Source of the DNA: Corallochytrium limacisporum Hawaii
Lineage: Eukaryota; Protista; Pluriformea
DNA length: 54,084 nucleotides
Assembly: GCA_002811645.1 (NCBI GenBank)
Contig: PDIP01000084.1
Location: 44,609-98,692, forward strand
Direction of reading: 5' to 3'
Part shown: one piece after another, positions 10,190 through 17,628 of the stretch
Layout of the letters: every line of letters begins with the position of its first letter
Position numbering within the stretch: position 1 is the stretch's first letter
Translations under genes and position numbers: made by a program
The notes under the pieces: generated by a model
Seen by the model: only the letters and a program-made list of their open reading frames with translations
What the model was told of the DNA's origin: nothing
The model's database searches: none

Positions 10190-12422
10190 CCCCCTCCCAG
10201 CCTGTCCCTGTTGCCCTCTTCTTTTTTTTTGCAGCCGGTGCTTGGGAGAAAAAATTGGCACAGTGGGGTCAAATTTTACGGGTTCCACGCCTGTCATAGA
10301 AAATATACCGTATAGTAATGGACTTCCGCCCCAGATTTTGGTCCAGAGAGCAAGTTTTGCGAGGAGGGCAGGCAGATTTTTTGGGGATCCGCCCGCGTGC
10401 TGAGCTCGCTAACAGCACATGGACGGAAAACGGAACTCGGGAGTCCTTTGGTCCAATATTTGTCCGCATGTTCGGTATGGAATTCACGCCTGCTAGTAGG
10501 TATGGTGCCAATCTTAGGACCCGTCTTTGTGCGGTTCACTTCTGGGAGGGAGCGCCGCCCCTCTCGCACTCCGAAGCCAAGACCTGCGCAACCCGGCCAA
10601 GAGCATAAACAAACGGCCGCTACCATACCGGCTCCGTTGCTGACTTTGCTGAATTGCAGTATGTTTTCTATAAGAATTGTCGTCACGTTGATTACATCGC
10701 CGTGTGGGGAGGCAGTGGCATTTTCTCCGCTTGTGTGGTTGGGGTCGGGCAAGTTGACAAAGTCGGCTGCGCTCTCTTTATTTGCTGTCTCTCTACCCCA
10801 TTCCATCATACCCTCTCTAGCTACTTCCGTCGCCACGTATGACTTGCTCGACCTTTTTTTTTCCCGGTGGCCCTTGGTCCGTGTTACGGTACACTCTTAG
10901 TCCGTGCCCTTCCACCCATGTCTTTGTGACTGTTGCCCAGAGTGACTGAGGCGCATAACATCTTGTCTGGGCCCCGGTGTACTGAATCTGCCAGTTCCAA
11001 TGTTGTGCAGCCTAATCGAAGAAATTGAAGGAGGGCCCACCCGGGGGGGGGGAGGAGGAGGCAAAGAGGGAGGGCCTGTTCCACTTCCCCTGCCATTTTT
11101 TTTTGGTTCCGTAATTGGGCACTGGGTGGTATTGAAAGTACTGAGGTTCATTGGAAACGGTGTGGGTTGGTGGTTTTTTTGTCTTTAGGGAGATAAAAGA
11201 AGCGAGACGAGCTGTCAGCAGAAAAAAAATAGAGCTGGGTCCGTTCAGTATTTATCGTACCCGCACGATGAGCTCGATCAGTACCCTGTGTATGGCAAAA
11301 TCGGGTTATGGCATTGCGCCGAAGGAAAAAACTTGGACAAGGGGGGGGGGGTTCAGTGGGTTGCTCCTTTCGCCTCCTCACTATCGGCTAATGAGAACAG
11401 GGGAGTGGCAGGGATCGCCAAGGATCGACGTACCCGATAGGGGCCCGGGCACCACCAAGATAATGGAGACGAGGTTTGGACAATGCGAATAAAAGGAGAT
11501 AGAACGGGTGAAACCCCCTCGCAAACGAGAAAGACAAAAGGGGGGAGGGAGAGTGAAAAACTGAGGGCGAGAGTTGTGAATGTGGAAGACTTAACCCATC
11601 CGTGAGAGATATGGCTGGCCGTACAGGGGGGCAGTCACTCACACTCCCACACTAGGCCGGGTTTGCTGGGGGGGAGGGGGTGATTGAGCAGGGAAGGTGG
11701 TGGACACAGAGACCCGTACGGACGGCAGTGACCGGAAGGGCGAGAAGGTCCCCCCCCTGGCGGAGGGACTGCAAGGGATCATGCAGAGGTGCCGTCGCTC
11801 GCTCTTGCCGACTGCAAAAACGGACACCTCTCCATCTCCGATCGTGGGGAGGTTTGTTATTGCAAATATAGGCAGATTTGGTGAGTCCTTCGTCAAACTC
11901 TACCAACTTTGCGTGGAGCCGTGCTGACACTCCGGAACCATTGAGAGTTTCTTTTCGCGGAAGGCTGCTCTCTTTGACCCGCCTGCAAAAAAAAAAAGGA
12001 CTCGGCGGAAGAAAAGCAACGAGGACCTAGAGCGCCGCAGTACATTGGCTAGACGAATGTCCCGCTACTGGGTACATTTGACTTCCAGCGATATGGGTGG
12101 CTGCTGGCGGCCTTGTGCGGGAGGTGGATACGTTCACCTCTGGTGGGGGTGCCACCGCCAACTTTCTAGGAGAGCTGCCGTTTCGGATCTGATTGTTGCG
12201 TTAAGACCACTCAGAGGTTGCAGGCGGAATGAGTAACACCGATTGGAGGATAAATTTTCTTCGTTGACGACAGTTTTAACTCTATTCCGAGGACTGGTGC
12301 AGGTATATTAGGGATGATCAAACAGGGGTACAAGTTTATCCTACCTCAAGATTCATATCGGTATAAGTATGATCACACGAAGAAGTTAATCCATTATCAC
12401 TTAACTCCACCAATCTCCAGCC

Positions 12423-12608
12423 ATGTCCTCTCCTATCTCCTCGAACTTTGAAGAATACATGTGGATGGAACATGAAGATGAATTCGACATGGAAGTCCAA
12501 AACCGCCTGATGGAGAAGGCTGGCTTTGAGCCAATGCACAAAGACAAGGCATCCGCTGCCAGTCGCCTCAACCCGAACGCCCCTGTCTTCGTTCCACAGC
12601 AAAAATGA
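12423..12608 (+). CDS. PAIP2: PABP-interacting protein 2-like microprotein (61 aa): PAM1 core plus PAM2 motif
   Basis: NFEEYMWMEHEDEFDMEV resembles the human PAIP2 PAM1 core PFAEYMWMENEEEFNRQI (recalled). C-terminal SRLNPNAPVFVP is a canonical PAM2. Start context GCCATG; A-rich 3' flank. Confidence 0.88.
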   Translation: MSSPISSNFEEYMWMEHEDEFDMEVQNRLMEKAGFEPMHKDKASAASRLNPNAPVFVPQQK

Positions 12609-14452
12609 TTCTGCGCACTATGTGCAAACATTAATGAAGACATCTTGACCCGTGCAGTGCCTTGCACGTCGTTCAAACAGAGGATGGGTCTGCGCGAACT
12701 TTTGTCCACCCCTTTCAGTCACGAACTTGATCAACGCCACATTAACCTCATATCAACATCAAACATCAAATAGCGAAAAACATAATCTTTTCATTTATGA
12801 TTATTCATATCGTATTGTAAAGCAAAACAATAGCAATAAATATAGTAAAAGCAGACCTAGTACATCCACATACACGCATCTACAACATGAACTCCCCTAT
12901 CTGCACGCCAAGAGACTCCCCGTAGCGGATGTGCATCAACAGATGAAACTAGTTCATTGGACAGTTTCATACAAAAATTAAGAACAGAATCCACCATGTA
13001 ATAATCAACCGCCATCTACAGTCATGTCACACAATACCATGTCTGTCCACGGAGATAGATGGCGATTGCATACCAACAATGATGATCGACCAGAAGATTC
13101 TGGCGGCGGATCCCCCCCGTTTGGGTTCACCTCAGGCACTTCACTATACGAGCTGATCCCCATCCCCTTTTGAGTCACATCATTCCGCTTGTACTGGCCT
13201 ACGAGACCCTTAAGCAGGAGATACCACCCAACGGAACTTTAAAGACCTTACAGTAGAGAGAGTGCAAAATTTGGAAGTTCAAATACGATATACTCTCCTT
13301 TCGGCGTCTTTGAAATTGGACAATCTATTCGAAACCCTTCGGGTCTGGGGTTGCAAGGCGGTCCGGCTATTGGTCACAAGCTGAGGGCATGTGACAGTCG
13401 CACTTCTTGGAGGGTTCCGTGCGGTGGCCACTTTCCGGTACTGAACATACCGGACAAACGACCTCTCGAGGACCCCCATAGCGCAAAAGGTCCTCCGCAA
13501 TGCTGTCTCTATAATGTTCATGTCGACAAGGTTCCGGCTTGTATATGCAGTATATTTAATATACAATCTAATCTGTTGCAGGCAACTGTCTGCAGGAACT
13601 GCCTATCCCGAGTTCTTCACCTATTGGACCGATGGGTATCAGGGTTCGTCATCCTCTTTTTTCTCCGTCTATTGTCACGACATGTGAACCCCCCTACACG
13701 CTCTTGCAGAATTATAATGCGCCCAACAGGAGAAACACTTGTCCTCCACGGGCCACCGAGGCACACGCAGCAGACGGGTTTGTCAAGAAACTAAACGCGA
13801 ATATCTTTGGCGTGATAGTGCGTGAGCGCAGGTACAGATTGGCTATGGCTTCTGTTCCGCACAATCCGGCGCGAGCAGTAGGAGAGGGGGACCCAATGAA
13901 AGTGGCTGAAAGGGCGCCCACAAAACCACATACAAACGTATGTAGGATGCACGCACAGATCTATCAACTGTCCGCAACTTACGCACAGGGAAAAACACCG
14001 CCCCGTGGGGGAAGTCGAGAGCAGATTGGTCCGAGGGTGCGTGGCACAGGGTGGGCGAGTGCAGATATCGCGTGTCTTGTAAAAGTCGACAGAGATTATA
14101 TGGATTATGCCATGTCTATAATCCGGCAATATATCTATTCAAGGTTAGAGAAGTCCGCAAATAGCTCCCTTGGCTTCCATTATTGAAGGTAATTAAGCTC
14201 TGAACGACCTTTCTACGAATACGACGCGACTCGAAACCATAGCTTCGCAGAATACCGGTGGGTGATATAATTGTTGCGGGCAGTATGCGATCGTTAGTGA
14301 ATAGTCCCAAACCGAATCCTAACATGGCACACCCAACTCTGGCGTCTCAGATTATTGGCACGGTGAAACATGCTGTTCGTTTCGTTCAGAAGCCTTCCGA
14401 AAACATCCTGAGGTAAATAGGGGAGCATCAATAATCGTCGTACGCATCAATC

Positions 14453-16700: not shown

Positions 16701-16991
16701 GTTTTATCCGAGGTGATGTGCTATTTGGTCGCGACTTCTAGTCTACTTTTAGTACTCCATGCTACCACCGGTTCACAACTTTTAGTCTCTATCTCGCTTG
16801 GTCACGATGACCTATCTCCTGAGTCAAATTTTACTTCACTCATAGCGAGGTATAAATACCCCCACAACTCATGACAACACAAAGGAACTGATATGTACAC
16901 TCGCATGATATCAACCAACCCATCACCGTAAATCCTACCCTTGCGCTTCCTACCCGTACCCTGCACCACACTCATCCCCAAGCCCCCCCCC

Positions 16992-17052
16992 NNNNNNNNN
17001 NNNNNNNNNNNNNNNNNNNNNNNNNNNNNNNNNNNNNNNNNNNNNNNNNNNN
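16992..17052. other. Assembly gap (N run) after a poly-C tract in the divergent SNX/REV1 promoter
   Basis: Ns preceded by C9 (16983-16991). Confidence 0.99.
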
Positions 17053-17628
17053 CAGCTCTTCCCATTTCTGTTTTCTTGGCATTTTACCGGAAAGCACAAC
17101 CCAACGGAATTAAATGAACGCAAATTGCGGTTGAGAGGTAGGTCTGTACCCATACTAAATGTATGAGGAATTCAACCGGCAGACGCGGAAAGTGCTGCGC
17201 GGCCTTTTCGCAAGAGCGGTGATGAAATCGGGGGACTGAATCAAATCCGGCTGCCCCGTCAGAGGGTTACAGGGAAAGTGGAAGGTGACTGGAGGCCATC
17301 GACCAGTGGCGCTGATTTCCTTCAGTGCATAAGTTAACTATTGTTTAAGGTTGAATCGAAAAAACTTGAGGATGGACCTTAGCACTTTCGGTATCTGATT
17401 GAGAATGTTGCCATGTGAATCAGTAGTGAAGACACCGCGGAGCCGTTTCGTCTCATCGGCGCGAAAAATAAGACTGGAATGCGAGTGGGTCTCCCTGATC
17501 CGCTGGGTCGACCCCCGGTGAGCTCATGACCATCACTGCGCACTGGTCCAGGTTGCCTTCATCAGGGTACTTACGAGAAACTGCGCAACCTTTTCCGAGC
17601 CTTCCATTGCAGAATAAACTGTCAGACC

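What the first reader, a model, noticed from the sequence alone, without database searches (positions are those of the whole stretch)
12423..12608. A 61-aa minimal PAIP2 (PABP-sequestering translational repressor) in an apparently non-animal genome
Seen: a short ORF with FEEYMWMEHEDEF and a C-terminal PAM2 (SRLNPNAPVFVP). Known: PAIP2A/B and Drosophila Paip2 (about 120-130 aa) bind PABP through acidic PAM1 (FAEYMWMENEEEF core) and PAM2, displace it from poly(A) and repress translation. The family is generally described as metazoan and is absent from yeast. Inference: the host looks like an intron-poor unicellular holozoan, so PAIP2-type PABP control would predate animals. This copy is about half the animal length and lacks the long poly-Glu stretch, so it may define the minimal functional module. 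It falls below typical gene-calling length cutoffs.
Basis: partly seen in the sequence, partly recalled or inferred. Interest (0 to 1): 0.8.

Follow-up and report, generated by a model that had tools for sequence, protein, structure and literature searches.

The report
Half-size PAIP2 gene in animal relative
A single-celled relative of animals (most likely Corallochytrium limacisporum) carries a 61-codon gene that looks like a shortened PAIP2, a brake on protein synthesis found here otherwise only in animals; this suggests the brake is older than animals, but its expression and activity are untested.

Summary
It has an N-terminal FEEYMWMEHEDEFD segment and a C-terminal PAM2 (Pfam 24.2 bits, cut-off 20), the best PAM2 match in the genome.

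The likeness to PAIP2 goes beyond PAM2:
- Of 1.84 billion protein representatives, the only true hits are arthropod-type PAIP2 proteins.
- A profile built only from animal-type PAIP2, scanned over the whole 24.1-Mb genome, hits this ORF alone. It matches PAM1 (E 2e-6) and PAM2 in one frame.

Codon usage, start context, a TATA-like box and an AATAAA fit a small single-exon gene.

The host is not an animal. Assembly size and near-absence of introns match published Corallochytrium, and a Lys2-type lysine-synthesis enzyme is present. It has one PABP with four RRMs and an MLLE domain.

Limits:
- Only the first half of the animal PAM1 is present (24-residue predicted helix; motif spacing 37 residues against 63-140). 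"Minimal functional module" is therefore unproven.
- No second non-animal relative was found, and the searches could not reach other protist genomes.

Verdict: probable pre-animal PAIP2 variant; function inferred.

The parts
12423..12608 (+). 61-codon ORF plus TGA stop: PAIP2-like protein, 7.1 kDa, pI 4.77
12447..12518 (+). Residues 9-32: PAM1-core-like acidic, aromatic segment (FEEYMWMEHEDEFD...), predicted helix. It matches the first half of animal PAM1.
12519..12557 (+). Residues 33-45: short disordered linker. It stands where animals have the second acidic half of PAM1 plus a long linker.
12558..12596 (+). Residues 46-58: PAM2 motif (L49, N50, P51, A53, F56, P58), the predicted ligand of the MLLE domain of PABP
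12402..12404 (+). In-frame TAA six codons before the ATG; it bounds the reading frame upstream
12362..12367 (+). TATAAG, a TATA-like box 56 nt before the ATG (inferred promoter element)
   Evidence: function inferred
12835..12840 (+). AATAAA, a poly(A)-signal-like hexamer 227 nt after the stop (inferred)
   Evidence: function inferred

Best explanation
This is a real single-exon gene of a unicellular holozoan, most likely Corallochytrium limacisporum. It encodes a 61-residue, acidic, largely disordered homologue of animal PAIP2. Shown here: the protein has two PABP-binding elements in the PAIP2 order. One is an N-terminal acidic, aromatic helix (residues 9-32) homologous to the first half of PAM1. 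The other is a canonical PAM2 (residues 46-58) just before the stop. The genome also encodes the expected partner, a single cytoplasmic PABP with four RRMs and an MLLE domain. Inferred, by analogy with published human Paip2: PAM2 docks on the MLLE domain, and this raises the local concentration of the acidic helix. The helix then occupies the poly(A)-binding face of RRM2 and/or RRM3. Competition with poly(A) there, and with eRF3 and ataxin-2 at MLLE, would damp PABP-dependent translation. Because the second half of PAM1 is missing, I expect the helix to engage one RRM at a time, with weaker affinity than in animals. The protein would then be a PABP modulator whose grip depends mainly on PAM2. 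The animal form would be a later elaboration, or this one a secondary reduction.
For: Homology: an exhaustive phmmer search of 1.84e9 representatives gave six hits. Four are PAIP2-type (the two named ones are mirid-bug proteins, E 5e-7 and 5.5e-5) and two are repeat artefacts. The alignments show 17 invariant columns across both motifs. Profiles that include the ORF retrieve 612 and 395 proteins, and the named ones in the top 120 are all arthropod PAIP2. The reverse test, an animal-only profile over the whole genome, hits only this ORF. The PAM2 residues match those of the solved human Paip2 peptide, 1JGN chain B. Gene-likeness: single copy; best codon-usage score among the real short ORFs of the window; start context gCC-ATG like neighbouring genes; TATA-like box and AATAAA; no Pfam or Rfam match for the overlapping antisense ORFs or the flanks. 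Architecture: helix at 9-32 with pLDDT 74-80, the rest disordered; pI 4.77. Partner and network: one PABP of 714 aa, RRM1-4 plus MLLE at 95.9 bits; eRF3, ataxin-2 and a helicase carry the other PAM2 motifs. Mechanism in humans.
Against: Only about 24-30 of the 54-58 RRM-contacting residues of human Paip2 have a counterpart. No second non-animal homologue was found in any search. The ORF is short, so the statistics rest on about 35 aligned residues. The animal N-terminal MK.P motif is absent: K2 is invariant in the animal set, whereas this protein starts MSSP. No binding or complex model could be computed.
Confidence: 0.65

Rival explanations
1. The gene is real, but the product is only an MLLE ligand, a small PAM2 adaptor or competitor. 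The PAM1-like helix has another role or is too short to bind RRMs, so PABP is not displaced from poly(A) and translation is not repressed in the PAIP2 way.
For: The second half of PAM1 is missing, with motif spacing of 37 residues against 63-140. Human isolated-RRM affinities are only micromolar, and nanomolar binding needs the whole 26-83 region with RRM2-3. In human cells PAM2 is the element required for association.
Against: The most conserved block of the family, the aromatic core, is exactly the part retained, with every invariant position kept. That argues for selection on an RRM-directed function.
Confidence: 0.15
2. The ORF is not expressed. It is a chance ORF or a decaying relic of a once longer PAIP2 gene.
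For: No expression data were obtained. It is half the animal length.
Against: The frame is intact from ATG to a stop just after PAM2. Codon usage is gene-like in this frame only. All family-invariant residues are retained. Promoter-like and poly(A)-like signals lie at sensible distances.
Confidence: 0.08
3. The 61 codons are one exon of a larger gene, and the other exons were missed.
For: A CAG lies just before the ATG (…tctccag|cc ATG) and GT-containing sites lie upstream at about 12304 and 12361. The 1.5 kb upstream has no long ORF.
Against: The published intron density of Corallochytrium is about 0.0 per kb of CDS, and every large gene in the window is a single ORF. An in-frame stop lies 6 codons before the ATG. 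The stop comes 3 residues after PAM2, as in animal PAIP2, where PAM2 is near the C-terminus. No coding-like ORF lies upstream.
Confidence: 0.05
4. The gene is animal DNA: an assembly contaminant or a recent horizontal transfer.
For: All detected relatives are animal-type.
Against: The ORF lies inside a 54-kb stretch of intron-free genes whose GC content and codon usage it shares. It is no closer to one animal group than to another (37-54% identity) and has an architecture seen in none of them. It has no intron, whereas insect genes are split inside PAM1.
Confidence: 0.03

Closest known systems
Animal PAIP2 (human PAIP2A/PAIP2B, Drosophila Paip2, arthropod PAIP2 and PAIP2B)
   Same: It is a small acidic disordered protein. 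It has an N-terminal F-x-E-Y-M-W-M-E-x-E-[DE]-E-F-D core followed by V...L.E, and a PAM2 near the C-terminus with L, N, P, A, F and P conserved. Sequence search is specific in both directions.
   Different: It is 61 aa against 104-244 aa in the relatives fetched here, apart from one 80-aa record (human is about 127 aa, from memory). It lacks the second acidic, hydrophobic half of PAM1 (...EEALMEQCIEAMLEDE... in insects), the long linker and the conserved MK.P N-terminus. It has no intron. It comes from a non-animal.
PAIP1
   Same: It binds PABP through PAM1 and PAM2 (bioRxiv 10.64898/2026.07.31.742013).
   Different: PAIP1 has a central MIF4G domain and stimulates translation. There is no MIF4G here: Pfam finds only PAM2. 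That paper describes PAIP1 as restricted to metazoans.
Plant ERD15 / cucumber PCI6
   Same: These are small acidic PAM2 proteins that bind the PABP C-terminal domain. PCI6 represses translation in extracts (PMC4252990).
   Different: Their PAM2 is N-terminal, and that paper reports no EYMWME-type PAM1 core. They are functional analogues, not detectable homologues: none appeared.
Generic PAM2 carriers (eRF3, ataxin-2, SF1 helicases)
   Same: They share the PAM2 motif for MLLE. All are present in the same genome.
   Different: They are large multidomain proteins without a PAM1 core, and their PAM2 scores are lower (21.5, 20 and 16 bits against 24.7).

Membership tests
PAIP2 | PAM1 aromatic, acidic core (F-x-E-Y-[ML]-W-M-E-x-[EA]-[ED]-[ED]-F-[DN]) in the N-terminal part | tested here: met
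   Residues 9-22; invariant F9, E11, W14, M15, E16, F21, D22, V25, L29, E31. The animal-only profile gives 32.2 bits, E 2e-6, and is the sole hit in the genome.
PAIP2 | Full-length PAM1: about 54-58 residues contacting RRM2 and RRM3 (human 22-75 / 26-83), including the second acidic, hydrophobic stretch | tested here: not met
   The alignment ends at about residue 35 and the second half is a gap. Spacing from the PAM1 core to PAM2 is 37 residues against 63-140 (median 79) in 135 relatives; one 80-aa record has 42.
PAIP2 | PAM2 motif near the C-terminus | tested here: met
   Pfam PF07145 at 24.2 bits, above the cut-off of 20. Best PAM2 in the genome. It matches the residues of the human Paip2 peptide in 1JGN chain B, including the Phe that is critical in humans.
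PAIP2 | Small, acidic, intrinsically disordered | tested here: met
   7.1 kDa, pI 4.77, with 9 acidic against 2 basic residues in residues 1-35. AlphaFold2 predicts one helical segment at 9-32, the rest disordered. Human Paip2A is natively disordered.
PAIP2 | Sequence search is specific in both directions | tested here: met
   Forward: the only true hits among 1.84e9 representatives are PAIP2-type. Reverse.
PAIP2 | Conserved N-terminal M-K-x-P | tested here: not met
   K2 and P4 are invariant in the 15 animal-type sequences. This protein starts M-S-S-P, so only M and P align.
PAIP2 | Binds PABP RRM2-3 and MLLE, displaces PABP from poly(A), represses translation | not testable with these tools
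   Only the partner was shown: a PABP with four RRMs and an MLLE. The structure tool takes single chains only.
PAIP2 | Expressed gene | not tested
PAM2-bearing MLLE ligands (generic) | PAM2 motif, and an MLLE protein in the same organism | tested here: met
PAIP1 | MIF4G domain between PAM2 and PAM1 | tested here: not met
   Pfam finds only PAM2, even at E up to 10, and 61 aa leaves no room for the domain.
ERD15/PCI6 (plants) | N-terminal PAM2 | tested here: not met
   PAM2 is C-terminal here, at residues 46-58.

The most novel reading that the evidence does not exclude
The 61-residue protein is the ancestral, or a naturally minimised, PAIP2. On this reading a single 24-residue acidic helix tethered 13 residues from a PAM2 is enough to take PABP off poly(A) and repress translation. 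PABP-sequestering control of translation would then have existed in the unicellular ancestors of animals, and animals later lengthened PAM1. The protein would also be a natural minimal peptide inhibitor of PABP.
Probability: 0.3. Interest if true: 0.65.

Novelty: new variant of a known kind. Interest (0 to 1): 0.5.

Why it matters
PAIP2 is a central brake on PABP-dependent translation in animals, with roles in growth, spermatogenesis, memory and antiviral defence. Every relative found here is an animal-type protein.

A specific homologue in Corallochytrium would move the origin of this regulator to before the animals. It would add to the regulators once thought to be animal inventions that are in fact older.

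At half the usual size, it is also a natural experiment. It can show which part of PAM1 is needed to compete with poly(A), and how close PAM1 and PAM2 may lie.

Corallochytrium can be stably transfected (bioRxiv 10.1101/2020.11.12.379420, title seen). Function can therefore be tested in the organism itself.

The case also shows that short regulatory proteins of this size can be missing from protein collections.

Tried and rejected
- **Word-index search with the 61-mer alone:** no candidate of 34-107 aa.
- **PDB by sequence with the 61-mer:** only a chance match to SAE2 at E 0.42. NCBIfam gave nothing.
- **ESM Atlas:** a weak lead to a PAM2 cluster at 0.76, below the level that counts.
- **Two profile searches meant to expose non-animal relatives:** both were filled with arthropod PAIP2, and only the top 120 rows are shown. 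The second did not take the 61-aa length window I intended.
- **Metagenome scan:** 19 loci. All have the animal-type MK.P start or insect exon structure, and none is short or evidently protist.
- **SRA and JGI sample ids of two unnamed hits:** these gave no organism.
- **P0001 (511 aa) and P0003 (3100 aa):** rejected as repeat or compositional artefacts.
- **Two short ORFs that outscored the ORF in codon usage:** they span a run of N and are artefacts of my script.
- **Bacterial-type promoter and terminator scan:** irrelevant for a eukaryote.
- **Literature:** no paper in the library holds Paip2 together with holozoa or choanoflagellate. I found no explicit statement of the family's taxonomic range.
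- **The look-up of sequencing runs:** I did not try to get round it and did not use read laying.
- **Spliced model:** none was needed.

Full report
**What is there.** window:12423-12608(+) is an ATG-to-TGA ORF of 61 codons. An in-frame TAA lies six codons before the ATG (12402-12404), and the stop follows the last motif by three residues. The product is 7.1 kDa, with pI 4.77 and 9 acidic against 2 basic residues in its first 35 positions.

Pfam recognises only the second element: PAM2, residues 46-58, E 2.3e-5, 24.2 bits against a curated cut-off of 20. AlphaFold2, run with a 7-row alignment, predicts helices at 9-16 and 18-32 (block mean pLDDT 74-80) and disorder elsewhere.

**Is it more than chance?**
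- The ORF is single-copy in its 24.1-Mb assembly.
- DNA able to encode EYMWME occurs once in the genome.
- Its PAM2 is the best-scoring PAM2 in a six-frame scan of the genome: 24.7 bits, against 21.5 for eRF3, 20 for ataxin-2 and 16 for an SF1 helicase.
- With a codon table from the ten long ORFs of the window, the ORF scores +0.38 bits per codon. That exceeds 92% of in-frame 61-codon windows of those genes. The other five frames score from -0.51 to +0.05.
- Among 108 short ATG ORFs outside the long genes it ranks third. The two above it span a run of N and are artefacts.
- The longer antisense ORFs (88 and 102 aa) have no Pfam match and poor codon scores. Rfam finds nothing in 10800-13700.

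**Is it PAIP2 or only a PAM2 protein?**

*Forward search.* phmmer against 1.84 billion cluster representatives, with no length filter, returned six proteins at E <= 1e-3. Two are repeat or compositional artefacts (P0001; P0003, 3100 aa). Four have the PAIP2 layout. The two that carry names belong to mirid bugs, and a cluster member is named polyadenylate-binding protein-interacting protein 2B.

*Alignment.* Invariant columns span both motifs: F9, E11, W14, M15, E16, F21, D22, V25, L29, E31, and L49, N50, P51, A53, F56, V57, P58.

*PAM1 alone.* Residues 1-42 score about 30 bits against insect proteins with one PAM1 core, and 39-44 bits against those with two. The likeness is therefore not carried by PAM2.

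*Reverse search.* A profile of 15 animal-type sequences, without the query, was scanned over the whole genome in six frames. It gave two matches at E <= 10, both in this ORF, in one frame and in the right order: profile positions 37-70 (32.2 bits, E 2e-6) and 125-146 (17.8 bits).

*PAM2.* The same profile picks the human Paip2 PAM2 peptide from the PDB (1JGN chain B), and its L, N, P, N, A, F, V and P are all present here.

I take homology to PAIP2 as well supported.

**What is missing.** In the alignments the similarity fades after about residue 35. The second acidic, hydrophobic stretch of the animal proteins and their long linker have no counterpart. The distance from the aromatic core to LNP is 37 residues. 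In 135 relatives it is 63-140 (median 79). The one exception, at 42, is an 80-aa insect record that clusters with a 140-aa form and may be a mis-called model.

Published work on human Paip2A places the RRM-contacting region at residues 26-83 (NMR; PMC9019252) or 22-75 (bioRxiv 10.1101/2021.02.07.430161). Isolated RRM2 and RRM3 bind it with Kd 4 and 1.3 uM, and RRM2-3 with about 1-2 nM. The protein here keeps roughly the first half of that region. It also lacks the M-K-x-P start that is invariant in my animal set.

**The host.** The window is part of contig C269 of an assembly of 24,109,830 bases in 286 contigs. Ten genes of 423-1079 codons in the window (REV1, RRM1, a MARK/KA1 kinase, a TBC RabGAP and others) are each a single ORF.

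The published Corallochytrium limacisporum assembly is 24.1 Mb, with an inferred intron density of about 0.0 per kb of CDS (PMC5560861). The genome also has:
- a Lys2-type alpha-aminoadipate reductase above the curated cut-off, in one 1346-aa frame. Animals do not make lysine (my knowledge);
- no match to Wnt or to the nuclear-receptor ligand-binding domain. This is a weak negative, because those searches had no positive control.

Earlier agents of this scan also named the genome Corallochytrium. I tested that only through the features above. An animal host is very unlikely.

**Gene model.** Given the near-absence of introns, a single-exon gene is the default.
- TATAAG lies at 12362-12367, 56 nt before the ATG.
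- The start context gCC-ATG resembles that of neighbouring genes.
- AATAAA lies at 12835-12840, 227 nt past the stop.
- The 1.5 kb upstream is G-run-rich and has no convincing ORF.

These signals are inferences. I did not pursue it further and did not use read laying.

**The partner.** The genome has one MLLE-bearing gene (95.9 bits), a 714-aa PABP in one exon with four RRMs (L007:2814-4955:-). It matches yeast Pab1 (6R5K, E 4e-146) and human PABPC1 RRM1-2, RRM2 and MLLE structures, and its MLLE keeps the KITGMLLE signature. eRF3 (with the usual overlapping double PAM2), ataxin-2 and a helicase carry the other PAM2 motifs. The classical MLLE-PAM2 network is therefore in place.

**How it most likely works (inferred).** PAM2 docks on MLLE. 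In human cells this contact is required for association, and its Phe is critical; F56 aligns with it. The tethered acidic helix then competes with poly(A) for the RNP face of RRM2 and/or RRM3, as shown for human Paip2A.

With only half of PAM1 and a 13-residue linker, I expect weaker binding, one RRM at a time, and a greater reliance on PAM2. Whether that is enough to evict PABP from poly(A) is open.

**Distribution and novelty.** No non-animal relative appeared in any of these searches:
- the exhaustive search;
- the word-index search with the 61-mer, 34-107 aa;
- the two profile searches, whose named rows in the top 120 were all arthropods;
- the JGI metagenome scan, whose 19 loci all had the MK.P start or insect exon structure.

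This is a limited negative. The query is short, E-values are scaled to billions of sequences, short ORFs are often not called, and other protist genomes could not be scanned here.

No paper in the searchable library holds Paip2 together with holozoa or choanoflagellate. A 2026 preprint describes the related PAIP1 as restricted to metazoans.

I rate this a new variant of a known kind: a probable first non-animal PAIP2 with a reduced architecture. Its function and expression are still to be shown.

Noticed in passing
window:9982-10189 and window:16992-17052: Runs of N (208 and 61 bases), which are scaffold gaps. ORFs called across them, such as 16805-17153(-), are artefacts.
   Followed up: yes
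window:10900-12420: A 1.5-kb stretch upstream of the ORF without convincing ORFs. It is rich in long G runs and purine tracts (for example near 11040, 11340 and 11660). No Rfam match.
   Followed up: partly
window:13632-14186 (+): A 184-codon ATG ORF between the PAIP2-like gene and NUFIP1, with no Pfam match. Whether it is a gene is unclear.
   Followed up: partly
L004:1468-3039 (G000:C178): The eRF3 homologue carries the overlapping double PAM2 (LNPNASSFNPNAAE) typical of eRF3. Ataxin-2 (L005) and an SF1 helicase (L006) carry single PAM2-like motifs.
   Followed up: partly
L028 (G000:C246:151699-155532): A Lys2-type alpha-aminoadipate reductase, full length in one 1346-aa frame and above the NCBIfam equivalog cut-off. 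It is a fungal-type lysine-pathway marker in this holozoan.
   Followed up: partly
P0002, P0007, P0009, P0010, P0011: Mirid-bug and related PAIP2 proteins carry two tandem copies of the PAM1 aromatic core (DFSEYMWMEN... twice). This duplication raises their scores.
   Followed up: no
L012, L014, L015, L021 (metagenome contigs): Insect-type genomic contigs in which the PAM1 exon ends right after ...EEEFDKQ. An intron therefore splits PAM1 in insects, while the gene here is unsplit.
   Followed up: no
L011, L013, L016, L020, L025, P0005: A group of unnamed metagenome or transcriptome PAIP2 proteins shares WMEHE and, in part, SRLNP with the Corallochytrium protein. They keep the animal MK.P start and full length, and their organisms are unknown.
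   Followed up: partly
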